Positions 4,331 through 27,109 of a stretch of DNA of 33,047 nucleotides are shown here, in pieces. The position numbers and the translations under genes are program-made. Each line of letters starts with the position of its first letter. Position 1 is the first letter of the stretch. The notes beneath the pieces were generated by a model that saw only the letters and a list, made by a program, of their open reading frames with translations, was not told where the DNA came from and made no database searches. The DNA comes from Selaginella moellendorffii (lineage: Eukaryota; Plantae; Lycopodiophyta): positions 1 through 33,047 of the forward strand of contig NW_003314488.1 of assembly GCF_000143415.4 (NCBI RefSeq), in the 5' to 3' direction.

Positions 4331-4559
4331 GACTGCAATGCACTAAACCTTGGCTACCATTGGGGTTTTACGTCAGATTACTTGGCTTATGTAACAATTG
4401 GGCCAAAGTACTCTGCGATTTGATATTGGCAGCTTGTTTGCTTCACTCACCACATATATACTTTTTTGGTTGATGCAAAAGTTTGTAAAGGATTTGCAGT
4501 ACTGTCGGAGTGCGAGGGGGCCATGGGGAAAATCCTCGCCACTTCTTCGAGTGAGCCTG

Positions 4560-5830: not shown

Positions 5831-6210
5831 ACGAGATCTTTCTCGGGCTCAGTGTCGTAAAAAGCCTTAGTTATACCCATTTGCCTCATCTTGGCAAATG
5901 CTGGGATTACAGCTAGGCATTAGAAATTTACAAAGGCTTCAATGAAAAGAATACAATAAATTCCTTTTAGCATATGCCCTGCTTGGCATATCCTCTGGTC
6001 CAATACTCATCCTCAGTGCAATGTCTAAGGAATCAATGAGCGAGATTATGGATACAACATATGTTACTAACACTTGGTTTTTAACCAAAGCTGCTGAATT
6101 AAAAAATTACTAGAGCATCAGAACATTTTTATATATCAAATATGGAATTATATACTCTTCCATTATTAACTATAACCATTCCCACCGGATCAAGGGTAAA
6201 AAGTAAATAT

Positions 6211-6264
6211 TATGGCGTGCAATTCGTAAAAGGGTGAGTGTTACTATAGTAGATTTCACTCACA
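6211..6264 (+). repeat. Left terminal inverted repeat
   Basis: 26 bp perfect and 54 bp imperfect (7 mismatches) inverted match to 26860-26913. Confidence 0.95.
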
Positions 6265-6663: not shown

Positions 6664-8293
6664 GTTTACTAGAAGACGTGGAGGAAGATGAGGTGGATGG
6701 CCTTCCATCCAATTTTAGTGATTCGGACTGTGGTTCCAGTATAGATAGTGACAATGATGCTCTCCCAGAGGTTTGCTTAATTTCCAGCCTTCTAGATTCA
6801 TGATTTGCACGTTTCTAGGCCTTCTATAATTTTTTGCAATTGAGGGGATTCGGTAGTCCAGCTGCATTTGGCACTTGGATGCACCTGAAGATCCTCGAGA
6901 CTAAGACTACTGCTTACCTTGCATGCTATCTTAGAATTTCCAAGCCAACACTGTACAAATACATGTTGCTTGTCGATCCAAATTGGAGAGGTGTACATTA
7001 TAGAGTACCACCCGAAGAGGTACTTCATCACGTTCGAACTAATAATGCCATGAATCGAGGTGGCACAAACTGGGGGATTATCAATTTCTGATCCAGCTGT
7101 CGAACTGGAGGATACCGATTTAGCCGACGCCAAATTCATGAGGCCTTAGCCACTCACGATCCAAGTAGGCTGGAACAGAGGCACATGACAAGGATTCGAC
7201 GACGGATTTACAGGAATGAGGAGGCTTATGCACTTTGCCATATGGATTGTGAGTATTCTTTCATTTCTGCTTTTTTTTCAGCATATGTGGTAACATGTTT
7301 ATTGTAGCATATTGCAAGCTTGTAAGCTATGGTTTCTATGTACATGCCATTATTTGCAGGGCAACTCATTATATTATAGCTTGCGAGCTAGCTACCTCCA
7401 AAGAATCCCATACAATATTTAACACATATGCGTAGGCTGTTCGTCGATTTGGAAGGCCCAAGCGCATCCGGAGTGACAATGCTCCAGAGCACAATGAGGT
7501 TGAGAGGGACATGATCTGTTGTTGGGGTCCTGCAGCTAGAAGCTTCATACGTGGGACATCAACACGTAACCAGGTACTCACAGTGTTAGAGTTTTTCCAA
7601 ATAAGGACTCATAGGACTAAATCAAATTTGTTTTATAGCGCATAGAGCATTTGTGGAGAGAGCTCTTTGAGCGTGTGGTGTGGTTTTATAAGCACCTTTT
7701 TGAGTCCATGGAAGATAGGAATTCTCGATGTATCTAATCCATGGCACAACCAGAGTCTACGTTGTGTCTTTGCTCCGTACCTCAAGAAGGATATTTCACA
7801 CTGGGTTGCAACCTGGAACCTCCATGAGGTCCATCTGTATCAATGTGGTGATTACTTCAGACCATCTCATGTTCCTACAAACTTATTTCAACCGATGGAA
7901 CAAGAGCTTGGGTAACAATTTTGGTAATGTTACAGAATTCCTAATAAAATGTGCTTTTGGAGGATTATGCCGGCTGTTGGTGGAAAAGATATTGAAGACC
8001 TTCCCGGACCATTTCTCTCTAATGTCGAAGGTGCAACTTTGTCAGAGGTAATCTTTAGAGCAAGAATACAACAATTTCTTTAAATCTATTTTTTTGTGCT
8101 TGGCTACCTTATAGGCTCTTGGCACTGTTCGAAACCAGGCATTTTTGATGCATCGGGGGGACTCAACTTAGATAAGCAATATCTACTTCATTTGGATCTA
8201 ACAATGGAGTGTGTAATGGCTGATGTTGCGGGTGTAGATCTTCCACTTTACATCGAGAGTGCCTTGCTTACAGCAACACTAGTGAAGCGATGA
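6664..8293 (+). pseudogene. Spliced DDE transposase/integrase of the eukaryotic IS3/IS481-like (IS3EU-type) family, disabled
   Basis: The spliced reading gives an HTH-like YLACYLRISKPTLYKYM, then FSRRQIHEALATHDP...IRRRIYRNEEAYALCHMD|SYCKLVSYGFYVHAII...AVRRFGRPKRIRSDNAPEH...SFIRGTSTRNQ|RIEHLWRELF...WNLH. The D-D-E triad is at 7245, 7475 and 7645. Introns are 7249-7307 and 7574-7638. There are in-frame stops at 7089 and 7433 and a frameshift near 7720. The true start is uncertain and may be ~6470. Confidence 0.9.
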
Positions 8294-8519: not shown

Positions 8520-10086
8520 GTCATCTAACTGGAGGCAAGGCTTCTAGTGCACACTCCCCCGATTGCAAGACCATCGCCCAAGTGAGAGTGCCACAGCTGT
8601 GATGGTGGGTAGCTTCTCCTCGATCAAGTTTGCATAACCAATCCTTTGTGGTTTCTAGGCTCGAAGCAAGAACGCCGCACGCCTCAACAGCAGTAGACAC
8701 TATGCAGGAAACACCTCGCGAGCACGCAGCCAAGCACTCGATGTTCCGCAATCGGTACAGCCAACAGTCCCGCGAGACACATGCCAGCCACTTGATTTTC
8801 CAAGCTCCGTAGCAGGGACATCAACTCCAACAACATCCCATCCACAGCTCCCAACTGCATTTGAGCAAGCAGAGCGCTGCCTAACATTGCATACATTGCA
8901 ACATATGCGGAACCTCTAGCATGTTTCATTCTCCTCGCCTTCCTTGGAAAGTAGCAGCCCGAGCATTCGAAATGAGCAAGTCCGGACACCTCATGCCCAC
9001 GGTGTTGTCCAATCTGGAACACTGCCACCAACACCAACTAGAGGACGTGCTCACGGAATCCCATATAGTGCCATTGCTACTAGCCCCGCAACTCCACCAA
9101 CCACTACAACTCTCGCAACTCCATCTACCGGTACAAGTGCCAGTACCTGGCCATCTACCTCCCGAAGCAACAAGCGGTCTAGCTTGGTAAGTTTTTCATT
9201 TGTGCCCATTTGTTTTTTCCATGTGTTTTTCTGCGTAGGGTGAGTTCACAATGCCTCCACACCAGCGAGCTTATAGTTCCCCATCAGCATTCCACAACTA
9301 CTCCCAAAGATCGACATCATCATCTAGTGGAGCTTCGACATCCAGATATGTTCAAGCTGACCCTCAAGGCGGGCTGCCATGTGAGCCACAGGTATAACAT
9401 GACCCCATGCACTCTTCATTTTTTTCTTCTTTAGATTTGTTTAACTCATTTTTGTTTCACTGTGCTAGACTCTCTCACCGCTTGTGGCTACAGTGCACAC
9501 CTATGCCGATAACAATCGGCAGTCCTTATGTTGTCGTCGTGGACGTCGTGGCAGTCGATCCAAAGTCATTGGTGGGATGTCGTCTACGACACCCTTGGTC
9601 CCCCGGCTGTTCACCACAGTTCTTGTCACCAAGTGGATTGCAATCCCAAAGACTTGGCATGTACACTTATATGGGCGAAAAAGAGAGCCATCTGTGAAGG
9701 TGACGGAACTTGACGAGCTGGCAGTGGACCTCCCAGAGTGTCTCATATGGGGTGGCTTATACTCTAGTATTCCTTTCCAGCCCGGCACAGCCCAACATGC
9801 GATTCTACTATCACTCCAAGCCTCAGGAATCCAACCTTCATCCATGACCAACCCAGGAGCATTTGTCCGGCGTGCAAGGCAGTCCAATGGTGGTGAGGCC
9901 CATGCCGAGTCTGCAAAATTTGGCCTCAGCTCTATCCGGCCTTGCTACTGGCCTCCTCAAACATCATGGGGAGCAATAGCAAACAAGGCCAATGGCAATC
10001 GGGCAACAGTTATATATTTATACAATGTTATGGAGTATTTTACTGACAAACATTGGCTAAGTTATCAAAAGCAGGCCCGAGCACTC
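8520..10086 (+). pseudogene. 5' part of the transposon's HECT-domain gene (S/T/P-rich N-terminus plus ORF 9484 onward)
   Basis: Coding-like blocks are separated by short GT-AG introns (~8605-8658, 9187-9238). The frame ...QARAL joins EEKDVRE at 17434 when the Gypsy and one CACTC are removed. The start is uncertain and frameshifts are present. Confidence 0.6.
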
Positions 10087-11741
10087 TGTAAGCGACTAAA
10101 TTTTCCATTCTACTTTAGTCACTTAACCACACCTCCAACCACTTGGAGGAGTCTCATTTGCAACCTCCATATGTCCAATTCAAGACTTGGGGCTTGCTAG
10201 CCCCGAGAATGGCATCCATGCCACTCAACCTTTGCACTTGGTCCAAGTGCTTCACGTGTCCAATCCCATGACCGACACCCCAAGGCACCACCGATATACG
10301 AGCCCGTTACGCTAGGCCACGCTCATTCACCTTGGTCACATCGGTGGTCTAACACCACCTGCATTGCAATCCCATCTCTCCAAGACTGGGCCATCCGTCC
10401 ATGAGTGATCATCCCAGATCCACTCCTTAGCATCCTTAGGATGCCCACTGACAAGGGGAATAGCCTTCCCCAATATCCCTCTGTCAGTCCCCACTAAGTC
10501 CCTTTTGCCCTGGCCGTGTTGCCAACACTGCCACTGGATCGGGCCATGGCCGACATAGTCCCACGGTCCTCTGGGACTTCCTCACCACACGACTGTGTCC
10601 TTGGTCACTACCCCAGAGGATTGCTTCTCTTCCTTTCCACAGTTTGGGCCTTTGGGACAACATTTTGGAACACCGTGGCCTTACGCGAGCCACCTGGGTA
10701 CTCTCCCTGCCTTCCGCCCTTGGGTGCTCTAGCCATAGGCTTAGAGCAAGGTTCCGTTGAGCCACGCCTGGTATCCAAGTAGGTAGTGCCACCCACACTT
10801 GGATTGGGAGCATCGGCCAGTCGATCTCCCGGGGGAACTAGAGCCGGCTCTTGAACACTTCACCAAGCTACCCCGCTTGTCGGTCCATATTCACTCTAGT
10901 CTTGGACTTCCCAGTGGTCAGTTCATCACCCAACACTGGGTCTGGCCTTCCTGGGCCAAACTGGCCTTTCCTGGCCAAACTAGCTCCACTGCAGTCCTCC
11001 CCCTTACTATACTTTTGGAGCTCACCAAACCCCCCAGCGTCTGGGAGATGAATGCTTTGGGCTTTCACCCTCTTAGACTCGAACTCAGACTCGGACTTGG
11101 ACTCGGACTCGGACTCGGACTCGGGCTCGGTCTCGGCCTCCGCCTTAGTGTCGGTCTCAGTCCCGGTCTCGGTCTCGACCTCGGACTCCACCTCAAGTCC
11201 ATCTCGGACTCCATCTCGGACTCCGTCTCGGTCCATCTCGGACTCCATGTCGGACTCCACTTCGGACTCATCTCGGACTCCATCTCGGACTCCACCTCGG
11301 ACTCCGTCTCGGTCCATCTCGGACTCCACCTCGGACTCCACCTCGGACTCCATCTCGGACTCCGTCTCGGTCCATCTCGAACTCCACCTCGGACTCCACC
11401 TCGGACTCCATCTCGGACTCCGTCTCGGTCCATCTCGGACTCCATCTCGGACTCCATCTCGGACTCCATCTCGGACTCCGTCTCGGTCCATCTCGGACTC
11501 CATCTCGGACTCTTCCATGTGTCATGTGTTGGTCCTTTTGGGTCCCTTTTTGGAGCCTTGCTTATTGCTCGCTTCGTGCTTGTTCCTCAAGCACTTTGTT
11601 GGGAGTTCCACTCCCGCTCTCGACCTTTCAAGTCGGAGCTTTTAGTCCAAACGTGTTACGCTCATTTGGCTTTCGCTTCGGCCACTACCACGTGGCACCC
11701 TTCTGGCTCCACTTTGGGGCCTAGGGATTTTGTGTCTCACA
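10087..11741 (-). repeat. 3' LTR of Gypsy element (1655 bp)
   Basis: Direct repeat of 15816-17428, adjacent to the PPT. Confidence 0.95.
11073..11512. repeat. Tandem array of CTCGGA / CTCCATCTCGGA / CTCCGTCTCGGTCCAT units in the 3' LTR
   Basis: Hexamer-based low-complexity array, directly visible. Confidence 0.97.
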
Positions 11742-14700
11742 ACTCCACCACCCATAGATGAAGTTCGATGTCCTCATCGAACGGTAAACCCTTTTATAAA
11801 GTAATACCCACATGTATTATCATTTCCATCCTTGGCCCCCGGCCAATATTTGTCTATGGTTTGACACCGAAGGCTCACCATGCCTTGTCCATCCTCTAAG
11901 GAGCATAGTCTCTCCAACATAGAAACTCACTTGACCCCCTAGGGTGGTTTACTCCCTTTTATTGGTTCAGTTCTCGCTAAACCCGTTAGAAACACCCTCT
12001 CTAACTCAATTCCACTACTCATTCTCGAGTAATCTTAGATTCCATTGACATAACCTTTGCATTTTGGAACTTTTAATTTTGATTTCTCCGAGTCAATTTT
12101 CTAGGTGTCTCCGACACCTTACGTTGCACATGGTGCAACTCCACTTCCCTATCCTAGGAAGTTCTTTACTTGAGGGTACTATCATCCTCTCTTCGATATC
12201 GTGCCACCTTTGGGCACTAAGTTCCAGTTATCATAATTGGTGCTAGGGCTGCCCACGGCCCTATTATTTGGCTACCTTACCGCTCCCCCCTTTGGAGCAT
12301 TCACTTTCGCCAAATCGGAGCGGTTAGGAATCCATCCTTGGGGAAACATTGCCTTTCCCACAATCCGTTAGCACCCAACACATTAGTGTTCTCGGCTTAA
12401 CTTTGCCATTTGGATTCTTTTCCATGATTCCCATGGCTCTTTTCTTAGCCACTAGTCTTTTGCTCCTATCCTTGATTGTTGCACCCAGCAACATAGGATC
12501 GCTCCCTCCATTTTCGAGGTTTCCTTTCAATTCCATAGCAAACACTTTGCTTTTGTCAAGTCTAGAGGGTGTTCACCCCTAGTATGTCTCTTTAACATTT
12601 CCGGCTGTGGGCTCTATCCACGGCTTAACTTTTGAGACCCTCCCTTGGATCTCTTATAGAGACTACTTTCTTCGGATTTACTATGCCATAGCAGTGACAT
12701 AGCTCATTTCCCATAGGTGCTCTTTCCACTTGGTCACCTTGACCAAGCCACACCATTATCAATAGTTCAAATCAACACTTTGAATTAGGAATCATATCCC
12801 TTAACCCAAACAAAGACCTTGTCCTTGTTTAGCCACAAGATCACCTAGTGATCTCATCTTGACCCCTTAATAGGTCTACCAATAGGAACTAGGTCTTCCA
12901 GACCCTTCTAAGTTGTTGACTATGACCCCGAGGGCATCCCCCACACTTGGCGGTGCACCCAAGCCAGCCCTTCCGGCCAAGGATCCATAGCAACTGAGAC
13001 TGGGTGTCCCCATCTCATTCACCACGTCCTTGGTGCCTTTTGCACCAAAGTGTTCAAGTTAGATATGCCGAACTTTCACTCTAAGCAATCTAACCGTGCA
13101 TCACGACTCCGGGGCATCCCCCGCTTGGCAGTGTGCCCAAGCCAATCTCCTCATTGAGAGTCCATGACCACCAAAATATGAATGTCCTCATATTCCAAAC
13201 CATCACCACGCCTTAGTGATTTGAGACTTGAACCCAAGCACTAGAGGGTCGGGACTCGAACCCAACCTCCATATATGCATCTACGGACGGCATCACCCTA
13301 GATGCCTGGCGTGACTCCCCACGCCGGTGCACCAACTTATACTTAAAGCGCGCTATAGATCGCAGCTTAGGAACCTAGTTCCTCCACACTGCCAAGTCCT
13401 CTCACTTGACAAGTCTGTGATCATGCATGGACTCCTCCATGCTTGGCCCCATAGCCCACCCTTTTTGAAGTTATCACCTTCAACTAGGGTATTTGTTCCC
13501 CATGACTTGCCAATCTCGCTTGGCAAGTCCTCCGACCACTGTAACATGGTCCCTGCATAAGCATGAAAGTCCTTGACCATCGACTTTCGTTCAAAGCCCT
13601 CTCTTTGAACACTCGGGAACTACTTCCCTAACCTTGATAGCCTTGCCTCATGGCAAGCTTCAAGACCACGCTTCTGCTGTGCCATTCTGATTTCGCGCCT
13701 TTCATGAACCATTTACACTTGGCCTTTTTAGGTACTAAGCTACCTAGAATCATCTTTGGGAACTTTGAAGGAACTCTGTCCCTTAGCTTGCTAAAGCTTC
13801 CTTTTTCGCAAGCTTTATAGTTGCCATATAGTCTAACATGGACAATTCCATATTTTAGACTCTCCATGGCATCACAGTTGCTAGCAACAACATCCTCGAG
13901 CACCCTTTTAATTCTTCACTCCCAACTTGCATAACCCCCATTGGATATGCCCTTCGATTTCTATGGTTCAGTTCCATCCCAATACTACTTGCCTTTTGGC
14001 CCCATATGTTTCCTTTGGTTATTCTCCTCCAGATTAGGAGGATAGCTTTGCACATTTTACTATGCCTTAGCAAGTATTCTTAGGGATGAACCTACCTGAT
14101 AGCCTAGGGAGTGGTTCCTCAATCTTGGGCATGCTCACCTTATAATCCCACACACCGGGATTAACGTTGCTACTTATGGGCCTTTACATGCCCATCACTA
14201 GCCTTGCCAAACTTCCATTTTTGGCTTTGTCCAATTCGGGTAGACAGTCTTCTCCTATCTCCATAACCTCGGACATTTGGATAGCACCTTTTATCCATCA
14301 TTCGCTAGGGACTTAGTCCCTTGAGCCTTACCTATTGCCCTTGCGACACGAAACACCACCTTTTGGTGTTCTAGAATGTTTGGGTGTCCCAATGATGGCC
14401 TCCTGACCATGAGCATTCCCGTTTACGACATTGACTTACTATATCGTAACATAAGCAATTTATCCTCCGTAAGGGTATATCTAACTTCCTTATGCCATTA
14501 AAAAGTCTTCGGTAGCTACCCTCTACCCGTTTAACCAATTATCTTGCACCTCTTGCTTAGTTGCCTCATAGTTGTCAAGTCCTACAACTCATTACTGATG
14601 CTTCCACACCTCTATCATTGTTTTGGTCACCACACTCTACCACATGCCTTCTACCTTAGGCTATGCCATTCCCATTTCCGTTGGGATTCCTTTAGCAAGG

Positions 14701-15800
14701 GGTTCTTATGAACCCACCAACATAACCTCAAGGTATCATACCTTGGCACATTTGGTGTCTCCACACCATTGGCCCCACGAGCCTATCCTTATGACACTAC
14801 TTATTAGTGTCTAGGTCTTTGCCAAGACCAATATAGTTGTGCCTCATGCTAACTATCCATTAGCACCGCACCATAGTGTTTGTCCCCAACTCTGGGCCAA
14901 AGTTTCTTTCTTTTGGGAACATCTTTCCCACAACTTTAGTATGGCACATTCTGCCATCAATGAGATATTTCCTGTTCTCATACTTGGATCTTATGATCCT
15001 CCCCATACCTCATGGGGCACCATACACTTCAGTCTAAATGCTTCAATCAATCCCTTAGGACCATTCCCTGACCCCACTTGAGTCATCTAGCATTTTTGGA
15101 CTTCGCTAAACTAACGACCCATAAGGTCCTATTTTCGAGGTGCCAGCTCACTCAAATACAACTTCATGTATTCATGTCCTACTCATAAGGACCATCTTGC
15201 AAATGTTACTCCAACACTTCATTATTTCCCGTTCTCTGTGGGCTGCCTTTGCCCCTTAGGAGTATCCGTCCCTATGATGAGAATGCCGACTCATCCTTTG
15301 AGCACACCCCTAACTCCTTGGGTTCATTCCAGCATTTACAAAAGGTAGCCCCAGCTACCATTTCGAGGGCTCTTGCCCTCATCCGTACTTGACCTCTCAT
15401 GGTCATCAATTCAGGTCTCAAATTCATGAGCACCAGCCTCAAGTACGTGCGGATTATCTTGTGACTCCTTTATTGTTTTGGAGTCTGGATCTTTCCCGTG
15501 ATCCCAATTATAGTTGTTTACCACAACTACCTTAGTTAGTTTGCTGAGTCAAACGCTCATCCGGACCACATCCTCAACTCTTTGAGGGAAACCTTATACC
15601 GTTCCCAAGATCCCGAAGTCGTTCCCTTACTGGCCCTTTTCCATCCACCACATCGCACACAAGTTCACACATGAACTTGAGTGGAGAGCCATGTCCTCTC
15701 GACATGCTACTCCTCGAGGATAGGTCCATATCTAGGACCTTCCAATTTCAATACCAGTGGTGATATACTTGGCCACCAATAAGAGTCGGACTAAGGAACA

Positions 15801-15812
15801 GCTCCGATACCA
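15801..15812 (-). promoter_or_regulatory. Primer binding site (initiator Met tRNA) of the Gypsy element
   Basis: TGGTATCGGAGC on the minus strand, 3 nt from the 5' LTR, one mismatch to TGGTATCAGAGC. Confidence 0.88.
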
Positions 15813-15815
15813 AGT

Positions 15816-17428
15816 TGTAAGCGACTAAATTTTCCATTCTACTTTAGTCACTTAACCACATCTCCAACCACTTGGAGGAGTCTCATTTGCAACCTCCATA
15901 CGTCCAATTCAGGACTTGGGGCTTGCTAGCCCCGAGAATGACATCCATGCCACTCAACCTTTGCACTTGGTCTAAGTGTTTCACGTGTCCAATCCCATGA
16001 CCGACACCCCAAGGCACCACTGATATATGAGCCTGTTACGCTAAGCCACGCTCATTCACCTTGGTCACATCGGTGGTCTAACACCACCTGCATTGCAATC
16101 CCGTCTTTCCAAGACTGGGCCATCCGTCCATGAGTGATCATCCCAGATCCACTCCTTAGCATCCTTAGGATGCCCACCGACAAGGGGAATAGCCTTCCCC
16201 AATATCCCTCTGTCAGTCCCCACTAAGTCCCTTTTTGCCCCTGGCCGTGTTTGCCAACACTGCCACTGGATCGAGGCCCATAGGCCCGACCACTAAGTCC
16301 CACGATCCTCTGGGACTTCCTCACCACACGACTGTGTCCTTGGTCACTACCCTAGAGGACTGCTCCTCTTCCTTTCCATAGTCTGGGCCTTTGGGACAAC
16401 ATTTCAGAACACCGTGGCCTTACGCGAGCCACCTGGGTACTCTCCCCGCCTTCCGCCCTTGGGTGCTCTAGCCATGGGCTTAGAGCAAGGTTCCGTTGAG
16501 CCACGCCTGGTATCCAAGTAGGTAGTGCCACCCACACTTGGACTGGGAGCATCAGCCAGTCGATCTCCCGGGGGAACTAGAGCCAACTCTTGAACACTTC
16601 ACCAAGCTACCCTGTTTGTCGGTCCGTATTCACTCTAGTCTTGGACTTCCCAGTGGTCAGTTCATCACCCAACACTGGGTCTGGCCTTCCTGGGCCAAAC
16701 TGGCCTTTCCTGGCCAAATTGGCTCCACTGCAGTCCTCCCCCTTCCTATACTTTTGGAGCTCACCAAACCCCTCAGGGTTTGGGAGACGAATGCTTTGGG
16801 CTTTCACCCTCTCAGACTCGAACTCAGACTCGGACTCAGACTCGGACTCGGACTCGGACTCGGACTCGGGCTCGGTCTTGGCCTCCGCCTCGGTGTCGGT
16901 CTCGGTCCCGGTCTCGGTCTCGACCTCGGACTCCATCTCGGGTCCATCTCGGACTCCATCTCGGACTCCGTCTCGGTCCATCTCAGACTCCATCTCGGAC
17001 TCCGTCTCGGTCCATCTCGGACTCCATCTCGGACTCCGTCTCGGTCCATCTCGGACTCCATGTCGGACTCCATCTCGGACTCCACTTCGGACTCATCACG
17101 GACTCCATCTCGGACTCCATCTCGGACTCCACCTCGGACTCCACCTCGGACTCCATCTCGGACTCCGTCTCAGTCCATCTCGGACTCCATCTCGGACTCT
17201 TCCACGTGTCATGTGTTAGTCCTTTTGGGTCCCTTTTTGGAGCCTCGCTTATTGCTCGCTTCGTGGTTGTTCCTCGAGCACTTTGTTGGGAGTTCCACTC
17301 CCGCTCTCGAGCTTTCAAGTCGGAGCTTTTAGTCTAAACGTGTTACGCTCGTTTGGCTTTCGTTTCAGCCACTACCACGTGGCACCCTTCCTGCTCCACT
17401 TTGGGACCTAGGGATTTTGTGTTTCACA
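15816..17428 (-). repeat. 5' LTR of Gypsy element (1613 bp)
   Basis: Direct repeat of 10087-11741, adjacent to the PBS. Confidence 0.95.
16811..17199. repeat. Tandem CTCGGA-based array in the 5' LTR
   Basis: Same units as 11073-11512, with a different number and order. Confidence 0.97.
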
Positions 17429-18039
17429 CACTCGAGGAGAAGGATGTTCGTGAACGTAAGTCATTTTTTTTTTAAGTTCCCTCCTCACAAATATATGTTG
17501 TGGTCTTTGCAGTTGTAGCTGCTACAAATACCTTGACTGCAAATGATGATCCAAGGCCAGCCACGCAGGAACCAAACCCTTGCAAGAATAATGAAGAAGA
17601 AGACTCTGCGGATGAAGAGGACATTCTTCCATTACCGGAAGAAACTCTCCCCACACAAGACAACATGGACATTAGCAGAGTCGAAGAACAAGGTGATGGT
17701 GGGGATGAACCGCACCAAGGATCTCCAGAGACATCCTTGTCACCAGAGATAGTGGCTCCAGGCCATGCAGCTGGTAAAAAGCACTAACATAAATGAATAT
17801 TTTCTTCATTTTCTAATTTCTGAGTGCAGATAGGCCAATGGTAGTGTATGACAGTGATGGTAGAGGCCTTGAAGACCATGGTGTGCCTCCACCCCCCTTT
17901 CTAGAGGGAAGTAGCTCCACTCCGTTTACGCTTATAGAGTTGCTTGACAACTTTTCTACAGTAGAGTAAGATAATTGAAAATTTTGCTATTCAAAATTGA
18001 ACTAATGTTTGCATGTAGATTGTTAGAACAGCAACAAAG
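17429..18039 (+). pseudogene. Middle exons of the HECT-domain gene (acidic, disordered linker)
   Basis: Exons LEEKDVRE / VAATNTLTAND...PGHAA / RPMVVYDSD...LDNFSTVE / LLEQQ are joined by phase-consistent short GT-AG introns. The frame continues as QKWIDATNAF after the Copia is removed. Confidence 0.75.
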
Positions 18040-18189
18040 TCTAACGAAAGGTGAAACCGTGTGATGGTGCTCAAGATCCGTCATAGCATATATGGAATGG
18101 AAAATGTACATATGTGTGACATGGTGAACCGGTGAAGACTCGTGTCTCTCCACGTGGACTAGCCATGTGGCACAGGGCCACTCTCAACA
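18040..18189 (-). repeat. Copia 3' LTR (150 bp)
   Basis: Identical to 22430-22579 by eye. Confidence 0.97.
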
Positions 18190-21100
18190 CTCCCACTGGC
18201 ACTGTGGCCATCAGGAGTGATGCTCATCAGTGGAGAAAGTCCCAGCCCTTCGCGATGGACTTGAAATCGATCTCGGGGTAGTGCTTTTGTGAAGATATCT
18301 GCAACCTGAGTGGTCGTGTCGCAGTAGATCAGCTCAATTGTGCCATCTTCCACTTTCTCACGAACGAAATGATGATGAATCCCAAAGTGTTTGGTGCGTG
18401 AATGAAAGCGAGGATTGACCGCTAACGCAATGCAGCTTTGATTGTCACAGAAGAGGCGAGTGGGAGTCTTCACACTCACACCAAGGTTAGAAAGTAGTGA
18501 GCGTAACCACATACCTTCTTTGGTAGCTTGTGAGGCTGCCAAATATTCTGCTTCCGTACTAGAGGTTGCCACTGTACTTTGCTTCCTGCTGCACCACGAG
18601 ACTGTCGCACTGCCCAGGGAAAACGAATAGCCAGAGGTGGACTTGCGTGTGTCACAGTCTCCCCCAAAATCAGCATCACAGTACCCCGTGAGGGTAAGCG
18701 CTTTTCCCTGGTAGCACAATCCAAGGTAAGTAGTACCTCGAAGGTACCTGAAGATGCGTTTCACCGCTGCCCAATGTTGAGATCCAGGATTAGCCAGGAA
18801 TTGGCTAACTTTGCTCACGGCAAAAGAAATATCTGGGCGCGTACAAACAGCTGGATACATGAGACTGCCAACAGCTTGTCTGTAAGGGATGGAGTCCATG
18901 GCTCTCTTGTCGTCCTCTGTCTCAGGAGACATGGCTTGTGAAAGCTGGCAGCCTAGTTCCATTGGTGTCGCCACTGGATTAGAGCTCGTCATAGAAAACC
19001 TGGCCAGCATATCTTCTATATACTTGGCTTGGTGAAGATAGATAGTGCATTGAGAGCGATCACGCACAAGTTCCATGCCAAGAAAGTAGGAAGCCGAGCC
19101 AAGAGTTTTCATCTCAAATTGGCTGCAAAGATCTCACTTAACCTGGAGAAACATTAAGCGATGATTATGGATGACAAGAGTATCATCAACATAAAGAGCG
19201 ATGATCACAAATGATTCACCCTCCACCCGAATATAAAGATTCGGGTCTGCCTCGCTACAGGAAAAGCCCACACTTAGTATAAAATCGTCAAAGCGTTTGT
19301 ACCAAGATCTGGGTGCTTGTTTCAAGCCGTAGACAGCTTTCTTGAGAAGCCAGAGATGATCCTCTTTTCCAGCGGCTAGAAATCCTTCTGGCTGTGCCAT
19401 ATAGATTTCTTCTTCAAGCGCGCCATAAAGAAACGCCGTGGTCACATCCATCTGTTCCAGATCAAAGTCTCCCACCGCAGCAAAATTAATCAAGGAACGA
19501 AGAGTAGAATGCTTAACCACTGGAGCGAAGGTGTCGTTGTAGTCAAGTCCAGGAACATGCGAGCATCCTTTCGCCACCAATCGCGCCTTGTAGCGAACCG
19601 AGCCATCAGGATTAAGCTTCAGAGCATACACCCACATGCTCTTGATAATCTGGCGATCGGAAGGCACAGTTGGAACAAGAACATGTGTCTCGTTCTTTTG
19701 CTGTGAAGCAATCTCGGCTTCCATTGCTACACGCCAGTAAGACGCTTCCTGCGAGGCCATGGCTTCTCCATAGGTCCTCGGAACAGTAGGAGTAGCTGCA
19801 CGAGAGGAGACCATTGTCTCGATGAGACGCTCAGTAGGCCGCCTTGTGCGGATCGATCTGCGTAGAGGATCTGGAGGAGGTGGCGGGGTTGGTGGTGTTG
19901 GAGTAGAAGCGGGCATGGGTTGTTGCGTAGGGACTGTTTGAAGCGGCACAGTGATCGTGCCAACAGTCAACTGATCTTGTTCCGCTTCAACGTCATTTTC
20001 TTCGGTCAAGGTAGGTCTAGAACCTTGACTAGAAGGAAGAAAAGAATTCTCGTTGAAAACCACATCTCTGCTCAGGATCTCCTGCTTCGTGATTGGATTC
20101 CAGAGACGATAGGCTTTGTGATCGAAGCCCACAAACACAGCCTTCTGGCTCTTGGGGTCCAATTTCTTGCGCATTCCATCAGGGATGTGTGCCCACGCTT
20201 CACACCCGAATATTCTCAGATGCGTAACTGTAGGTTTCTTGCCACTCCATGCTTCTTCAGGAGTGATGCCAGCAAGGGCAGAGGTGGGGAGCCGGTTCTG
20301 GAGATAGTTCGCCGTCAAGACAGCGTGAAACCAGAAGCTGCGAGGCAAACCACTGGAAAGTAGCATTGCCCGAGCACTCTCCACTAGTGTGCGATTCTTG
20401 CGCTCAGCTACGCCATTCTGTTGTGGAGTCTCTCGCGTTGTAAGTTCTCGCACAATCCCTCCTTGCTCACACAGCTGGTTGAAAGCATTAGAAGTGAATT
20501 CGCCTCCACCATCACTTCTCAATCGCTTGAGCATTTTCCCAGTTTGTGTTTCTCCCATATCCTTGAAAGTCTGGAAGTAGTGTAACGATTGGGATTTGCG
20601 AGCCATAGGGTAGATCATAGTGCGACGACTGTAGTCATCAATGAAACTGATAAAGTATTGGATACCTCCCACTGCTGTGGTGGCCATCGGGCCACACACA
20701 TCAGTGTGTACAAGTTCCATGAGCTCTGTAGCTCGAGATGCTCCAGTCTTGGGGAAAGGTTGGCGAGTAGATTTTCCTAGCTGACAGCCCTGGCAAAATG
20801 GAAGAACGGCTCTTGGGTCCAGGTCTAGACCTTCAACCATCTGCTCGCGTGCGAGCTGCTTGATTCTATCAGCACTAGGATGCCCCAGGCGTGCGTGCCA
20901 AAGCTCCAGTGAGTGACTGGTCGTTGTCTTTTGTGCGTGTAGGCCCAGACTCCGTCCAGCAAGATCTGGCAGCATGGTAAGGCGGTAGAGGTCACGCCGT
21001 CCAGGCCGGGACGCTGTGAGGATGGCTCCTGTGGTCGAGATCAGCTGGAATTGGCGAGGTGTAATGGCGAACTGATACCCATCCTCAGCAAATTGTCCCA

Positions 21101-22259
21101 CAGAGAACAAATTAGCACATAAACCAGGAATATAAAGAACCTCGTGGATCTTTACGACTATTCCTTGTGGTAAAGTGAACTTGATGGTTCCAATTCCTTT
21201 CACAGCAAGCTGCTGGGCATTGCCAACGATGACATACTCCTCTGTGGCTGTAGGATCATAGGCTTCAAAGTACTTATCACTGTTGAACATATGGTCTGTA
21301 GCAGCAGAATCCAGGTAGATGCACTCTGTAGACAGTGCTGCCACTGCCATAGCTCGTGACAAGATGAAGGCGTGTACCACCTTTTTCTTTGCATTGTTCC
21401 TTACAGGCTTGAGAGATGGATTTTTCACCCAGCATTGAGCTTCGTCATGGCCTTTCTTGTTGCAATGAGAACACTTGGGCTTCTTGGATGAAGAGGCTCC
21501 TTGTTTCCCTTTGTTCACTGTTTCTTTCCTGAGAGAAGAGTAGAATGCAACGGCCTCTGATCCTGTTGTTGCTCTTCGTCTCAGATCATCGTCCTGGAGG
21601 CTACTGATCACGCCATTCAGGGTTAGAGGAGTTCCAGTGGTAGTGAGGCTACGTATGAGAGGATCAAAGGATGGAGGAAGTGTGACGAGCACCAGCTCTG
21701 CTTCTTCTTCATCCTCTATCTTCGCTCCCACATCCTTAAGATCATCTAAGATTGTTCTCGCTGCAGCAAGATGATCCTTGAGGTCGTCCCCTTCAGCCAT
21801 CACCAGTGCATGAAGCTGCTTCCGTAAAAAGATGCGATGGGATGTTGAAGGGATCTGGTAAGTCTGCTTCATGGCCTCCCACGCTTCCTTTGCACTCTTG
21901 CACCGTCCAATGCAATGGAATTCTCGCCCCTCCAGCGCTGCATGGAATTTGCCCAAAGCTCTCCGGTCCTTCTTGCGATACTTCGCAGTTTCATCCACTG
22001 TAGCTGTATCTGGAAGTGTCTCAGTTCCTGTGGTGATGTCCCAGAGGCCTCGTTCATCCATATAGGATTCGAATTTTGTCTTCCAGAAGCGCCAGTTCCT
22101 CCCATCAAATTTTGGTGGATTTGCGTCCACTGAAACGATATCCGCTGTAGGCACAGTCGAATTTGTGATGGGAGGGGAAATAGGTGGTGGATTTGGAGGC
22201 AGATTTGTAGGAACAGTGGCTGCCATGGGTGCTGACACCCAATCCCACCACTCGTTCAA
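18159..22259 (-). CDS. Copia Gag-Pol polyprotein, broken by a single in-frame TGA at 19134-19136
   Basis: Motifs: gag PKFDGRNWRFWK, zinc knuckle CSHCNKKGHDEAQC, protease YLDSAATDH, GAG-pre-integrase LWHARLGH, integrase HTDVCGP/RSDGGGEF/AERKNR, RT YKARLVAKG and YVDD, RNase H YCDADF/EAEY/CDNQS/ADIFTKAL. ORFs 19134-22259 and 18159-19112 are in the same frame (QVK*DLCSQFEMK). Confidence 0.96.
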
Positions 22260-22417
22260 GTCTAGGTCCAGGTTCTTAGTCGTCCAGTGCCTCTTGCAAG
22301 GCCTGGAGCGCTTGGATTAGGGCATGCCTCTGTCTACGTAGACGGAGGCTCCAATTCACCCTAGCAAGTGTCGTCCTGATCCTATGGTTTCGTATTCTTC
22401 TCGCTCTCCCAGGCATT

Positions 22418-22429
22418 GCTCTGATACCA
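22418..22429 (-). promoter_or_regulatory. Copia primer binding site (initiator Met tRNA)
   Basis: TGGTATCAGAGC directly after the 5' LTR. Confidence 0.95.
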
Positions 22430-22579
22430 TCTAACGAAAGGTGAAACCGTGTGATGGTGCTCAAGATCCGTCATAGCATATATGGAATGGAAAATGTACA
22501 TATGTGTGACATGGTGAACCGGTGAAGACTCGTGTCTCTCCACGTGGACTAGCCATGTGGCACAGGGCCACTCTCAACA
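22430..22579 (-). repeat. Copia 5' LTR (150 bp)
   Basis: Identical to 18040-18189. Confidence 0.97.
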
Positions 22580-24955
22580 CAAAAATGGATTGATGCCACC
22601 AATGCATTTAATGAAGCTGTTCAGTTAACCACTCAGGATAGTGCCAATTTCATCATGCTGCAGATTGAGGAGGTTTCTGCCTTACAGGATGCCACCACAA
22701 CCCTTGAGGTGAGGGCACAGGGGGATGCTGAAGTTCTCTCACAGGTGCAGTGGCTGAAACACAAGCTTCTTGGTTGCTTTGGCGTGGAGAGCACAAGTGA
22801 CGAGGAAATGCTAGATGCTATTGTTAGACACCCTGAATTCCATTGGGCTGGCGGTGAAATATTTCTGCGGCGCGTGCTTTTCAACCAAGCCATGCCTCAT
22901 TGGCAAGATTGGGAGAGTCTTCTTCTTAAGCTTGGCCTTTCAGAAGCACAATACGAGGATGTGTTTTATGACAACACAATCCAACAACTCCTTGCTGAAG
23001 TAAGTATTAATGTGCCTCCTTCAATTCTTGAGTCCACAATAGCATGGTTCATTGAGAAGAGGTACGTGTATCTATTTCTTAGCACTTAGTACCATCTTAT
23101 GGTTTTGTGCAGGGACCTACGTAAGAATTGGGTGGCTGCACAACAATTGAGAAAACTATTTGACACTACTGAAACACTGTATTGTAAGTTCTCTTGTTTT
23201 TGCATCGAGAAGGCCATGCTTCGGCCATACAGACTTGCTCGTACACGTTTGAGGCCGTCTCGCATTCTGGTAAGCAATGGATTGCCTATGAATTGGAGTT
23301 ACTTCACTTGTCCTTCTAGATTGCACCAAACAATGAATTCAATTGTTTCCAATTCACCTTCAATCACCGAATTACAAAGTGGTCTATGCGTCTGAGATTG
23401 GGGGAGCTTTGGTGTGGGAGGAATCCACAATAGATGTGGGTGGGCCATATGCAAACTATGCGGAGATGAATATGTCCTCAGTGTAATCTCCGTACACGTT
23501 TGGCTGGTACAGGCTCGTACACGTTTGAGGCCGTCTCGCATTCTGGTAAGCAATGGATTGCCTATGAATTGGAGTTACTTCACTTGTCCTTCTAGATTGC
23601 ACCAAACAATGAATTCAGTTGTTTCCAATTCACCTCCGCAGGTGAATTGGTCCTCAGTGGACGCGGAGATGCGGAGATGCGGAGATGAATATGTCCTCAG
23701 TGTAATCTCCGCACACCGAATTACAAAGTGGTCTATGCGTCTGAGATTGGGGGAGCTTTGGTGTGGGAGGAATCCACAATAGATGTGGGTGGGCCATATG
23801 CAAAAGCCATTAGGGAGGCTGTTCGCCAGATTCTAGGATCGGTAAGTCTAATTTTCACTTGGCTCACTAAAGTAATTTTGTGTTACAGACGCGTGGACTG
23901 TTTGTGTTTAGGGAAGGAACCACATATTGGCATCCCAGGATGCTAGTGCATTCTAGGACGTTGCGACAAGAAGAGCGGGATGTGGTAAGTTAAGTTTAAA
24001 GCATAAGTTTTATATACTCCTCACTTTTATATGCACAGGCTACCTTTGTGGGATGGTTGCTATTCCAAGCGTTCGAATGTAATACACATGTTTCTCGCGG
24101 GTGTACAATTGCAACATTGGCAATTGCAGTTGGAGAGGTTCCAAACGAAGATGACCGACGACTTGCCCGAGGAGGACTATATGAGATGGACCTCAAGGCA
24201 TGCGCACCGCATATCTGGAATGCACTCAACCAATTGCGAGGTGCATCAAGCTTAAAGGAGGAGGGTGATCAGTGCAAGTCTATGGATTCCATCCTAGAGA
24301 ACCCTGCAATTACTGACTACAATGCAGTGCTTGAGTCTAGACTCACCGAACTTGGTGAAGGTTATGAGAATGCTGTGGAGGCATGTGTGGCTGCGGTGGT
24401 TTGGCATTACCTATTCATCGAGCCAAACGTAGTGGGAGACTTACTCTGAGATGGCTTCCAACACTCAATGTGCATGGAAGCTCGTCAGAGGCCTTACAAG
24501 AGTCCAGCATTGCTAGGTGGGCTTTCACTCATTGGGACATATGCTTTGTTACAAGTCTTCCGGGTAAGGACGATCATTCCTCCCGCGGAGTTCATCAACT
24601 GCCTGATCTTTGATCAGGACTTTGGAGAAAACTTCCACATCTGGATTGTAGACATCATTCGAGGTAACTATTTACTTTCACAAACAACTAAAACTCTTGT
24701 ATGTTTGAACATTTTATAAATATGAGCCCGAAAGAGTTATCCAAGTTCCATCACTTTGCGGTTGATTCTCCAGAGTTCCGACCGGGAGAGCTTATTTGGA
24801 TCCAAGTTGAGAGACAGCGTACATCATCTACTCAATTTCCCAGGTTCTCCACATGCACACGAGAAGTTTTCTTCCCTTTAACATACCCGTCAAAGGAGTG
24901 GACCAAAATCCAAAGAGCTTGTATGGATTGGGCTGATGTTGTGGAAGTAATGTAG
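22580..24955 (+). pseudogene. 3' part of the transposon-borne gene with a divergent C-terminal HECT E3 ubiquitin ligase domain
   Basis: HECT-like motifs in the right order: EESTIDVGGPYAKAIRE (GExxxDxGG box, ~23770), FVGWLLFQA, DLKACAPHIWNALNQL, L*DGF, MSPKELSKFHHFAVDS and FPRFSTCTREVFFPLTYPSKE (LPxAxTCxxxLxLPxYxS; Cys codon 24854-24856). Lesions are a frameshift near 23765, a stop at 24447 and a probable AG>AA acceptor at 24719. Confidence 0.82.
23237..23803 (+). repeat. Rearranged local tandem duplication inside the HECT gene
   Basis: 23237-~23495 repeats blocks of 23513-23803 almost identically but in shuffled order. Confidence 0.93.
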
Positions 24956-25076
24956 ACACTTTCATAATAAAAATAGATAATTGTCTTGAAATATGTTTCA
25001 CACTTTGAAAGAGACTCTTTCCAGTTCATTGGCGAAGTTAAAGGTAAGAATATTCAAAATATTCCACAAATGCCCA

Positions 25077-25667
25077 TTATAGGCATTTGCGGCCCTTAGT
25101 ACCCTTTTGGCTTATGCTTGTCTCACCAAGGGTAATCACTATAGCTTCCAAAGCAACTCCCAATTTAGGTTCTGGGTCAAAACTATCGAGCTTGGGTGCT
25201 ACATGATGCCCATCCTCGCTTGAGGAACTCTCAACCTGTTTGGTAGAACCCAAATCACCCTCTGGGTCTGTGAACTCATCCTCACTTGCATCTCGAGCAG
25301 TAACATATCCCTCGCTGTCGCTTTCTTCAGCAGGACCTTTCCCCTCGGTGATTGGCACAAGATTAGAAGTAGTCTTGGGTTGCCTTGTCGGAGGGATTGT
25401 CGAGCCTTGAGAGGAGGAGGCATCATATAGAATCCTCGGTCCTGTCCCCTGTTGGATCCATTGTTGTGCCTCAAAGAAGTCATAAAATCCTCTCCAGTTT
25501 GCCATGCCAGGAGGAAACCCAGAAACCTCAAACATTGCAAAAGGGTTAGACCATATAGGAAACTATTACAAATCTACTCTTACCAAAGTGAGCACGAGCT
25601 TCCAACCCCTGAAAACTCCAGTTCTTCGGCCGCAGCGCACGGCATACATTGGATAGTTTTGCCCCAT
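25077..25667 (-). CDS. Two-exon protein: N-terminal RNase H1 hybrid-binding (Cauli_VI/viroplasmin) domain plus acidic tail, ~177 aa
   Basis: Exon 1 (25667-25584) is MGQNYPMYAVRCGRRTGVFRGWKLVLTL. A 57 nt GT-AG intron follows (25583-25527). Exon 2 (25526-25077) begins VSGFPPGMANWRGFYDFFEAQQWI. This matches the YAVRxGRxxGIYxxWxxxxxxVxGFP...KxFxxxxEAxxF pattern. The frame is intact. Confidence 0.8.
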
Positions 25668-25695
25668 GCTTGGAAACCCTTTTTACAAATTTCAA

Positions 25696-25968
25696 AATTT
25701 GAAACGGTTATGATTGGAAAATATTGTAAGTGTCCATTGTCATTGCTCTTTTCACCTAAATGTTATTACATGCAATTGCAACTCCCATATTCTCAAATCT
25801 CCTTCAGCATGTTCCTCTTGAGAGAACTCCAGGTCCAATTTGAAACAATTATAATTGGAAAATGTTGAAAGTGTCTATTGTTATCCTGAATGTTACTACA
25901 TGCAATTGCAACTTCCACATTCTCAAATCTCCTTTAGCATGCTCCTCTTGAGAGAACTCTAGGTCCAA
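25696..25968. repeat. Two diverged tandem units of ~135-140 bp
   Basis: 25696-25836 and 25837-25968 share AATTTGAAAC...ACATGCAATTGCAACT...CCTCTTGAGAGAACT. Confidence 0.9.
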
Positions 25969-26859: not shown

Positions 26860-26913
26860 TGTGAGTGAAATCCACCGTTGTAAAATCCACCCTTTTACGA
26901 ATTGCACGCCATA
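26860..26913 (-). repeat. Right terminal inverted repeat
   Basis: Reverse complement of 6211-6264. Confidence 0.95.
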
Positions 26914-27109
26914 AATATACCTGATATGAAACAATTCGTCTTCAGTGCATTCCTGTATCCCTATCCACCACCTCATAATTTGATGATGTCCCTGCATAAG
27001 CATGTGCTACTTGGAAAGCAATGAATGTAAAACATATGTGAGCTCCTCCAATAGCAAAGCTAACTAGCATAGACAACTGAAACAAATTGTTAAGCAATTA
27101 TCCATAAAT

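What the first reader, a model, noticed from the sequence alone, without database searches (positions are those of the whole stretch)
8520..24955. Hidden HECT E3 ligase gene split into three pieces by two retrotransposon insertions
Seen: the reading frame is restored across both insertions (QARAL|EEKDVRE and LLEQQ|QKWIDATNAF). The C-terminus has a DVGG box and FPRFSTC...P..YPSKE with the catalytic-position Cys retained. Knowledge: plant HECT (UPL) genes are a small conserved family, and this sequence is far from their consensus. Inference: a transposon-specific HECT lineage, possibly an anti-silencing or transposase-regulating factor. The N-terminal globular block at 9484-10086 is unrecognised and could be the substrate-binding part.
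Basis: partly seen in the sequence, partly recalled or inferred. Interest (0 to 1): 0.8.

Follow-up and report, generated by a model that had tools for sequence, protein, structure and literature searches.

The report
Dead transposon-borne HECT ligase gene
This is a dead copy of a ubiquitin-ligase-like (HECT) gene carried by a many-copy GingerRoot/IS3EU jumping gene of the spikemoss Selaginella moellendorffii; two retrotransposons and four smaller defects break it here, and no paper I could search reports such a ligase gene in a DNA transposon.

Summary
Two LTR retrotransposons (10087-17428 and 18040-22579), each with a 5-bp target duplication, split one multi-exon gene. The reading frame continues across both sites, and eight sister copies elsewhere in the genome are uninterrupted there.

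The gene is not otherwise intact. This copy also has:
- a rearranged exon 6;
- an in-frame TGA at 24447;
- a lost splice acceptor (AG to AA at 24718-24719);
- a 25-nt frameshifting deletion 15 codons after the catalytic-position Cys.

The gene lies inside a TIR- and TSD-bounded GingerRoot/IS3EU DNA transposon (6211-26913), between the integrase-type transposase and a small opposite-strand gene. All nine copies examined have this layout, and all nine are broken. No defect is shared by all, so the founder carried an open frame of about 940 codons.

HECT identity is moderately supported:
- Pfam E about 2e-4 on two sister gene models, below the curated cut-off;
- protein-language features and the ESM Atlas model match HECT only;
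- Cys 35 residues from the end.

No relative outside this family was found, so a recent capture of a host UPL gene is unlikely. The function is inferred only. The scan has already noted this family on other DNA of the same genome.

The parts
6205..6210 (.). Left target-site duplication AAATAT of the DNA transposon
   Evidence: Same hexamer at 26912-26917 if the terminal A is counted with the duplication. Read as a 5-bp AATAT duplication, the element ends in CCATA.
6211..6264 (+). Left terminal inverted repeat, starting TATGGCGTGCAATTCGTAAAAGGGTG
   Evidence: 62-bp inverted match, 85% identical, to 26920-26860. The TATGG..CCATA termini fit the TAYGG..CCRTA ends reported for fungal IS3EU (PMC12730594).
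6664..8293 (+). Intron-containing integrase-type (IS3EU/GingerRoot) transposase, decayed
   Evidence: Pfam rva_4 E 7.8e-6 on 7667-7915 and a faint rve hit, E 0.007 (17 bits, far below the cut-off), on 7295-7435. Sister gene models P0008 and P0019 carry rve/rva_4.
8659..9186 (+). Ser/Thr/Pro-rich exon of the HECT-like gene (176 codons, one TAG here). It starts at a splice acceptor.
   Evidence: Polypyrimidine tract plus AG before 8659, GTAAGT at 9187. The same frame is open, or has one stop, in L002, L003 and L004. Gene models P0008 and P0019 join it in frame to the transposase's last exon.
9469..10086 (+). Exon 1, first part: the unrecognised 200-residue block, ending ...QARAL
   Evidence: Open here and in L002. 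No family by Pfam or the Atlas, and AlphaFold2 pLDDT 30.
10087..17428 (-). LTR retrotransposon insertion 1, with no recognisable genes
   Evidence: LTRs at 10087-11741 and 15816-17428, about 5% mismatches. Target duplication CACTC at 10082-10086 and 17429-17433. Primer-binding-site-like TGGTATCGGAGC on the minus strand. Only short ORFs inside. Absent from 8 sister copies.
17434..17455 (+). Exon 1, last 22 nt (EEKDVRE), followed by donor GTAAGT
17513..17773 (+). Exon 2, acidic linker
   Evidence: Mapped from gene model P0002 on L003. Open, AG/GT kept.
17830..17965 (+). Exon 3
18019..18039 (+). Exon 4, first 21 nt (LLEQQQ)
18040..22579 (-). Ty1/copia retrotransposon insertion 2, young
   Evidence: 150-bp LTRs 100% identical. 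Primer-binding site TGGTATCAGAGC. Pfam Retrotran_gag_2, rve and RVT_2. Target duplication CAAAG / CAAAA. Absent from 8 sister copies.
22585..23061 (+). Exon 4, remainder (WIDATNAF...AWFIEK)
   Evidence: Open; 81% identical to P0001 and P0002.
23113..23269 (+). Exon 5
23320..23841 (+). Exon 6 (start of the HECT domain, IDVGG). It is rearranged: a partial tandem duplication plus filler DNA at 23456-23702, and neither copy of the exon is whole.
   Evidence: Repeats D7 and D8. L003 9141-9546, 9315-9437 and 9445-9800 map to three window blocks. The rearrangement is absent from 8 sister copies.
23889..23984 (+). Exon 7 (TRGLF...)
24039..24663 (+). Exon 8 (HECT N-lobe) with in-frame TGA at 24447-24449
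   Evidence: Arg (CGA) in L003 and L004, Gln (CAA) in L002.
24664..24719 (+). Last intron (56 nt). The acceptor here is AA instead of AG.
   Evidence: A contig of run X9 skips exactly this stretch, and its 5 variants all match sister copy L002.
24720..24955 (+). Exon 9 (HECT C-lobe). Cys codon at 24854-24856. A 25-nt deletion at 24902/24903 shifts the frame of the last codons.
   Evidence: Pfam HECT E 0.17 on this ORF, and 2.2e-4 and 3.7e-4 on P0002 and P0019. The deletion is flanked by CCAAA microhomology and is absent from the four sister copies inspected base by base, L001-L004; it is not listed for L005-L008 in the lesion census.
25077..25667 (-). Small opposite-strand third gene of the element
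Evidence: A 151-aa gene is called at the same place in L002 and L008. Pfam found nothing at E 0.01 or better on the 152-aa ORF here.
26860..26913 (-). Right terminal inverted repeat

Best explanation
Shown: 8520-24955 is the middle gene of an old GingerRoot/IS3EU cut-and-paste transposon (6211-26913) of Selaginella moellendorffii. The element carries three genes. An integrase-type transposase comes first. Next, on the same strand, is a gene of about 1,100 codons and at least 10 exons that ends in a very divergent HECT domain. Last is a small gene on the opposite strand.

Shown: in this copy the HECT-like gene is a pseudogene. It was hit first by a gene-less LTR retrotransposon (in exon 1) and much later by a copia element (in exon 4). 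It also has a rearranged exon 6, a stop in exon 8, a lost splice acceptor and a 25-nt deletion in exon 9.

Inferred: the founder of the family carried an intact gene, because every defect is missing from at least five of the nine copies. That gene encoded a working HECT-type E3, with the Cys 35 residues from the end and an aromatic residue at -4.

Inferred by analogy only: the ligase served the transposon. One possibility is that it ubiquitinated a protein at the transposition site, such as the transposase or a repair or chromatin factor. It may even have been a C-terminal extension of the transposase. The other possibility is that it removed a host silencing factor.
For: Anatomy and insertions:
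- Target duplications and restored frames.
- Eight colinear sister copies lack both insertions and the exon 6 rearrangement.

Element:
- Inverted repeats, TATGG..CCATA termini and an AAATAT duplication.
- These match the published IS3EU/GingerRoot features: 6-bp duplication, TA..TA ends, TAYGG..CCRTA.
- rve/rva_4 transposase.

Gene model:
- Exons of public model P0002 on L003 all have GT..AG and 47-57-nt introns.
- The window keeps 7 of 8 acceptors and all donors.
- A contig of run X9 skips exactly the last intron, in frame.

HECT identity:
- Pfam HECT E 2.2e-4 and 3.7e-4 on P0002 and P0019.
- Atlas feature score 0.95, with 83 of 100 nearest clusters HECT. The Atlas's own model aligns about 300 residues to HECT proteins at TM 0.54-0.60 in every listed row.
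- UniProt names D8R6H2 'HECT domain-containing protein'.

Ancestral intactness:
- No lesion is shared by more than 4 of 9 copies.

Not a recent capture:
- Only this family was hit among 1.84 billion representative proteins.
Against: - The Pfam score (21.4 bits) is below the curated cut-off (23.9), and only the C-lobe matches.
- Sequence searches of solved structures found no HECT.
- My AlphaFold2 model was too poor to test the fold (pLDDT 45).
- All nine copies are dead.
- Differences between copies fit neutral decay. dN/dS is 0.45-0.63 against a neutral expectation of 0.64-0.71 for a spectrum that is about 90% transitions. So there is no direct sign of selection.
- Three RNA-seq runs gave no reads here, though nothing shows the organism is well covered in the part read.
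- X9 is only guessed to be RNA.
- No enzymatic activity or substrate is known.
Confidence: 0.75

Rival explanations
1. Captured host gene (a 'Pack-GingerRoot'). The element picked up a host HECT gene or fragment by chance and copied it passively, and the gene never worked for the transposon.
For: The GingerRoot paper reports that many elements in S. lepidophylla carry host gene fragments (abstract). Differences between copies look neutral. All copies are dead.
Against: It is not a fragment. It is a complete gene of 10 or more exons, with the HECT domain at the very C-terminus and an ancestral frame of about 940 codons. It is present in all 9 copies, from two subfamilies 87-96% alike. No parental host gene or any UPL was hit. 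Host HECT genes of this species all fall in subfamilies I-VI.
Confidence: 0.15
2. Not a HECT at all. The DVGG and Cys motifs are chance look-alikes in an unrelated transposon protein.
For: The window's own C-terminal ORF scores only E 0.17. The other exons get no HECT hit; one 168-aa exon has only faint, sub-threshold hits to unrelated families. There are no HECT hits among solved structures by sequence. The AlphaFold2 model is uninformative.
Against: Two fuller sister models reach E about 2e-4 to 4e-4 over profile positions 213-301 of 306. Language-model features and the Atlas structure both point to HECT alone, over the whole 368-residue region. The Cys sits 35 residues from the C-terminus and the tail has an aromatic at -4. 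Both are typical of HECT ligases (my own knowledge of the family, not tested here).
Confidence: 0.1

Closest known systems
IS3EU/GingerRoot DNA transposons (Cerbin et al. 2019, PMC6839031; Kojima 2023, PMC10045372)
   Same: Integrase-like DDE transposase with introns, terminal inverted repeats ending TA..TA, a 6-bp target duplication, many old copies in a Selaginella genome.
   Different: Neither paper mentions HECT or ubiquitin. They describe the transposase and captured gene fragments only.
TET/JBP-carrying IS3EU families of rust fungi and truffles (Kojima 2025, PMC12730594)
   Same: Same termini (TAYGG..CCRTA) and 6-bp duplication. Same three-gene layout: transposase, an accessory enzyme gene in the middle, and a third gene in the opposite orientation. 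The accessory enzyme there is proposed to counter silencing.
   Different: The middle gene there is a DNA dioxygenase and the third gene an alpha-kinase.
Ginger1 transposases fused to OTU or Ulp1 proteases; Mutator elements with Ulp1; Helitrons with OTU (Bao, Kapitonov and Jurka 2010, PMC2836005)
   Same: A ubiquitin- or SUMO-pathway enzyme coupled to an integrase-like transposase. There it forms the C-terminal part of the same protein. Here two public gene models (P0008, P0019) also fuse transposase and HECT in frame. The authors proposed that the ubiquitin pathway takes part in transposition or repair.
   Different: Those enzymes remove ubiquitin or SUMO. A HECT domain attaches ubiquitin. 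The fusion here is only predicted and has no RNA support.
Plant host HECT ligases UPL1-UPL8, subfamilies I-VI (Marin 2013, PMC3712016)
   Same: A C-terminal HECT domain with a catalytic-position Cys.
   Different: No detectable sequence similarity in database searches. Multi-copy and inside a transposon. None of the UPL N-terminal domains. Not counted among the 9 HECT genes of this species.

Membership tests
HECT E3 ubiquitin ligases (Pfam PF00632) | Significant match to the HECT profile | tested here: inconclusive
   P0002 21.4 bits, E 2.2e-4. P0019 20.7 bits, E 3.7e-4. Both are below the curated 23.9 bits and cover the C-lobe only. The window's own ORF has E 0.17.
HECT E3 ubiquitin ligases (Pfam PF00632) | Two-lobed HECT fold of about 350 residues at the C-terminus | tested here: inconclusive
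   The Atlas's own model of P0002 (pTM 0.48) aligns 294-312 residues to HECT proteins at TM 0.54-0.60, and all listed rows are HECT. Feature score 0.95, with 83 of 100 nearest clusters HECT. My AlphaFold2 model failed (pLDDT 45).
HECT E3 ubiquitin ligases (Pfam PF00632) | Catalytic Cys about 32-36 residues from the C-terminus | tested here: met
   In P0002 and P0019 the Cys of FSTCT is followed by 34 residues, with Tyr at -4. In the window the Cys codon (24854-24856) is kept, but the tail is frameshifted by the 25-nt deletion.
HECT E3 ubiquitin ligases (Pfam PF00632) | Forms a ubiquitin thioester and transfers ubiquitin | not testable with these tools
   Needs biochemistry on an intact homologue.
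IS3EU/GingerRoot DNA transposons | Integrase-like DDE transposase | tested here: met
   rva_4 E 7.8e-6 in the window. P0019 has rva_4 at 1.8e-13, and P0008 has rve and rva_4.
IS3EU/GingerRoot DNA transposons | Terminal inverted repeats ending TA..TA (TAYGG..CCRTA) and a 6-bp target duplication | tested here: met
   TATGGCG...CGCCATA. AAATAT on both sides, with a one-base ambiguity at the right end. Literature features.
IS3EU/GingerRoot DNA transposons | Dispersed multi-copy family with the same ends | tested here: met
   Eight further copies on eight scaffolds, 87-96% identical; seven are colinear end to end and L005 lacks the left 1.2 kb. 19 public gene models carry pieces of it; the 13 whose contig size was reported lie on 13 different scaffolds.
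Ty1/copia LTR retrotransposon (insertion 2) | LTRs, 5-bp target duplication, primer-binding site, gag-integrase-RT order | tested here: met

The most novel reading that the evidence does not exclude
GingerRoot/IS3EU transposons of this lineage brought their own ubiquitin-writing enzyme. This HECT E3 would be made with, or even fused to, the integrase-type transposase. It would be the counterpart of the OTU/Ulp1 'erasers' fused to Ginger1 transposases. I could not test that claim here.
Probability: 0.3. Interest if true: 0.8.

Novelty: new variant of a known kind. Interest (0 to 1): 0.55.

Why it matters
Transposons are known to carry enzymes that remove ubiquitin or SUMO, and enzymes that undo DNA methylation. 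I found no report of a DNA transposon with its own HECT ubiquitin ligase. If the founder gene was active, it is a new way for a transposon to use the host's protein-tagging system, either for transposition and repair or against silencing. It would also offer a natural transposase-ligase pairing to test at the bench. This particular copy is only a well-dated fossil: the DNA transposon came first, then an old LTR element, then a very young copia element. It is useful mainly for defining the gene's exons.

Tried and rejected
- AlphaFold2 on the HECT region of sister model P0002, with an 11-row family alignment, gave pLDDT 44.7. The Foldseek search of that model returned only meaningless rows.
- AlphaFold2 on the 200-residue N-terminal block gave pLDDT 30.3.
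- The Atlas search of that block gave nothing above 0.76.
- phmmer and hmmsearch against solved structures found no HECT. Queries were the window's C-lobe ORF, P0002:380-747 and alignment A1.
- Exhaustive phmmer with P0001, and word searches with P0002:380-747 and with the transposase part of P0008, found only S. moellendorffii proteins.
- Two metagenome scans, one with the transposase and one with the HECT region, found no relative.
- Pairwise dN/dS and codon-position counts among five copies showed no clear selection.
- RNA: three raw-read RNA runs gave zero reads on 22581-25700. This is not a test of silence.
- I considered treating the window's C-terminal tail (IQRACMDWADVVEVM) as the true HECT end. 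I rejected this because the four sister copies inspected base by base (L001-L004), including the older-subfamily copy L001, carry 25 more bases there and read ...HKIHRALQNPESLYGLG.
- A tree against UPL1-7 and G2E3-like proteins was not built, because no such sequences were available from the tools.
- The joined (spliced) protein of this window was never sent to any search or fold tool. Window exons were searched one by one by reference, and full-length tests used the public gene models of sister copies. In scripts the window pieces were aligned as separate fragments.

Full report
**What is in the window.** The genome is Selaginella moellendorffii. The only database relatives of the coding pieces are SELMODRAFT proteins of that species.

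The stretch 8520-24955 holds one plus-strand gene with short introns, cut by two nested LTR retrotransposons.

Insertion 1 spans 10087-17428:
- Its LTRs lie at 10087-11741 and 15816-17428 and differ by about 5% mismatches plus indels in an internal tandem repeat.
- It has no recognisable genes.
- A perfect CACTC duplication flanks it (10082-10086 and 17429-17433).

Insertion 2 spans 18040-22579:
- It is a Ty1/copia element on the minus strand.
- Its 150-bp LTRs are identical, and it has a tRNA-iMet-type primer-binding site and gag, integrase and RVT_2 domains.
- It is flanked by CAAAG and CAAAA.

The first junction reads QARAL|EEKDVRE, followed by GTAAGT. The second reads LLEQQQ(R/K)WIDATNAF.

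**Independent proof of the insertions.** I fetched eight other copies of the surrounding sequence from eight scaffolds (L001-L008). All are contiguous across both sites, and none has the extra DNA at 23456-23702.

**The gene sits inside a DNA transposon.**
- Inverted repeats at 6211-6264 and 26860-26913 end in TATGG..CCATA, and AAATAT flanks both sides.
- These are the published hallmarks of IS3EU/GingerRoot: 6-bp duplication, TA..TA ends (PMC6839031, PMC10045372) and TAYGG..CCRTA (PMC12730594).
- Upstream on the same strand lies the decayed, intron-containing integrase-type transposase. Pfam gives rva_4 at E 7.8e-6, plus a faint rve hit (E 0.007) far below its cut-off.
- Downstream on the opposite strand lies a small gene (25077-25667). 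It is also called as a 151-residue gene in L002 and L008.
- Without the two retrotransposons the element is about 8.8 kb.
- All nine copies have the same three-gene order.

**Gene model.** The public model P0002 maps onto L003 with GT..AG at every intron and introns of 47-57 nt. One 36-nt gap is probably an artefact of the prediction.

Projected onto the window, the exons are:

| Exon | Window coordinates | Note |
|---|---|---|
| Ser/Thr/Pro-rich | 8659-9186 | starts at a splice acceptor |
| 1 | 9469-10086 + 17434-17455 | split by insertion 1 |
| 2 | 17513-17773 | |
| 3 | 17830-17965 | |
| 4 | 18019-18039 + 22585-23061 | split by insertion 2 |
| 5 | 23113-23269 | |
| 6 | 23320-23841 | rearranged |
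| 7 | 23889-23984 | |
| 8 | 24039-24663 | in-frame stop |
| 9 | 24720-24933 | lost acceptor, frameshift |

The sum is about 1,120 codons.

The first exon starts at a good acceptor. Two public models (P0008, P0019) join it in frame to the last transposase exon. The two may therefore be one transcription unit, but there is no RNA evidence for that.

A 151-nt contig of run X9 skips exactly 24664-24719 and joins exons 8 and 9 in frame. Its five differences from the window all match copy L002. So at least the last intron is real and some copy is transcribed, if X9 is RNA as guessed. Three raw-read RNA runs gave no reads.

**This copy is dead beyond the two insertions.**
- Exon 6 is rearranged. L003 9141-9546, 9315-9437 and 9445-9800 map to three window blocks separated by 57 and 67 nt of filler, and neither version of the exon is whole.
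- CGA has become TGA at 24447-24449.
- The last acceptor is AA.
- A 25-nt deletion between CCAAA repeats at 24902/24903 shifts the frame 15 codons after the Cys.
- The Ser/Thr/Pro-rich exon has one TAG.

**State of the family.** All nine copies are broken:
- L003 has 1 lesion in the 939 codons scored.
- L002 has 3.
- The window has 4, plus the insertions.
- L008 has 9 and L004 has 10.
- The older-subfamily copies (L001, L005, L006, L007) have 21-24.

No lesion is shared by more than four copies. The shared ones sit in codons one transition away from a stop (CGA, CAA/CAG, TGG), so recurrent mutation is a plausible cause; shared ancestry is the alternative. The founder therefore had an open, correctly spliced frame of about 940 codons, far beyond chance.

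Differences between copies are about 90% transitions. Their dN/dS (0.45-0.63) is close to what position-shuffled mutations of the same kind give (0.64-0.71). The copies have decayed neutrally, and this test says nothing about the founder.

**Is it HECT?**

For:
- Pfam HECT hits on the two models that keep the C-terminus: E 2.2e-4 and 3.7e-4, profile positions 213-301 of 306.
- Atlas language-model features score 0.95 with 200 shared features, and 83 of 100 nearest clusters are HECT.
- The Atlas's own model of P0002 aligns about 300 residues to HECT proteins at TM 0.54-0.60 in every listed row.
- UniProt names D8R6H2 a HECT domain protein.
- The layout fits the family: IDxGG...GLF at the domain start, Cys followed by 34 residues, Tyr at -4. 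This comparison rests on my knowledge of HECT ligases, not on a test here.

Against:
- The scores are under Pfam's cut-off.
- There are no hits among solved structures by sequence.
- My own fold model failed.

I put HECT homology at about 0.8.

**Origin.** An exhaustive phmmer search of 1.84 billion representative proteins, a word search and two metagenome scans found nothing outside this S. moellendorffii family. The query of the exhaustive search (P0001) lacks the C-lobe, and the word search can miss distant relatives. Marin's survey places all 9 host HECT genes of the species in subfamilies I-VI with no 'others'. A recent capture of a host UPL is therefore very unlikely. An ancient capture cannot be excluded.

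**Function (inferred).** Two published parallels frame it:
- Ginger1 transposases carry C-terminal OTU or Ulp1 proteases, and the authors proposed that ubiquitin and SUMO signalling takes part in transposition or the repair that follows (PMC2836005).
- Fungal IS3EU elements carry a TET/JBP dioxygenase between the transposase and an opposite-strand third gene, thought to counter silencing (PMC12730594).

Position and orientation here match the second case, and the possible fusion matches the first. My rough odds:

| Reading | Odds |
|---|---|
| Transposition-linked role (transposase turnover, chromatin or repair at the site) | about 40% |
| Counter-silencing by degrading a host factor | about 30% |
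| Other role, or none | about 30% |

**The N-terminal block.** It is a genuine conserved exon, but no tool recognised it.

**Novelty.** The GingerRoot and IS3EU papers I could read do not mention HECT or ubiquitin. The scan has already noted this family several times on other DNA of this genome. One of those notes disagreed about HECT. I treated those notes as leads and re-tested what I could. The claim that the pairing occurs in unrelated organisms was not testable with the calls left.

Noticed in passing
window 4373-5789 and 27693-30032, minus strand: Decayed pentatricopeptide-repeat (PPR) gene fragments, including a DYW-type end (GDCHSAIKSVSKMVV...RFHH). They flank the transposon on both sides and may be pseudogenes or a duplicated PPR gene.
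   Followed up: no
window 1152-3171, plus strand: ORFs that look like reverse transcriptase and integrase of another retroelement (for example LDLRSAYYQI). The window is a nest of transposons.
   Followed up: no
window 11050-11560 and 16800-17250: Each LTR of insertion 1 holds a long array of 10-12-nt tandem repeats (30 copies in family D1). The array translates as SDSISD / GLHLGL in all frames and differs in length between the two LTRs.
   Followed up: partly
window 23456-23512 and 23636-23702: The filler DNA at the exon 6 rearrangement contains the same roughly 40-nt motif twice (GCGGAGATGAATATGTCCTCAGTGTAATCTCCG). The motif has short inverted ends (GGAGAT..ATCTCC) and might be a footprint or a tiny inserted element.
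   Followed up: partly
L001 5295-13408 and 16292-18125: Two copies of the element lie 3 kb apart with nearly the same left flank (AGCTGCTTAAACAA). This looks like a local segmental duplication rather than two insertions.
   Followed up: no
window 8282/8659; L002 5786/6164; L004 6322/6700: Two public gene models splice the transposase's last exon in frame to the first HECT-gene exon over a 377-nt intron. The transposase frame otherwise stops three codons after that donor.
   Followed up: partly
window 25755-25968: An 84-nt direct repeat, 92% identical and 130 nt apart, lies between the small third gene and the right end of the element.
   Followed up: no
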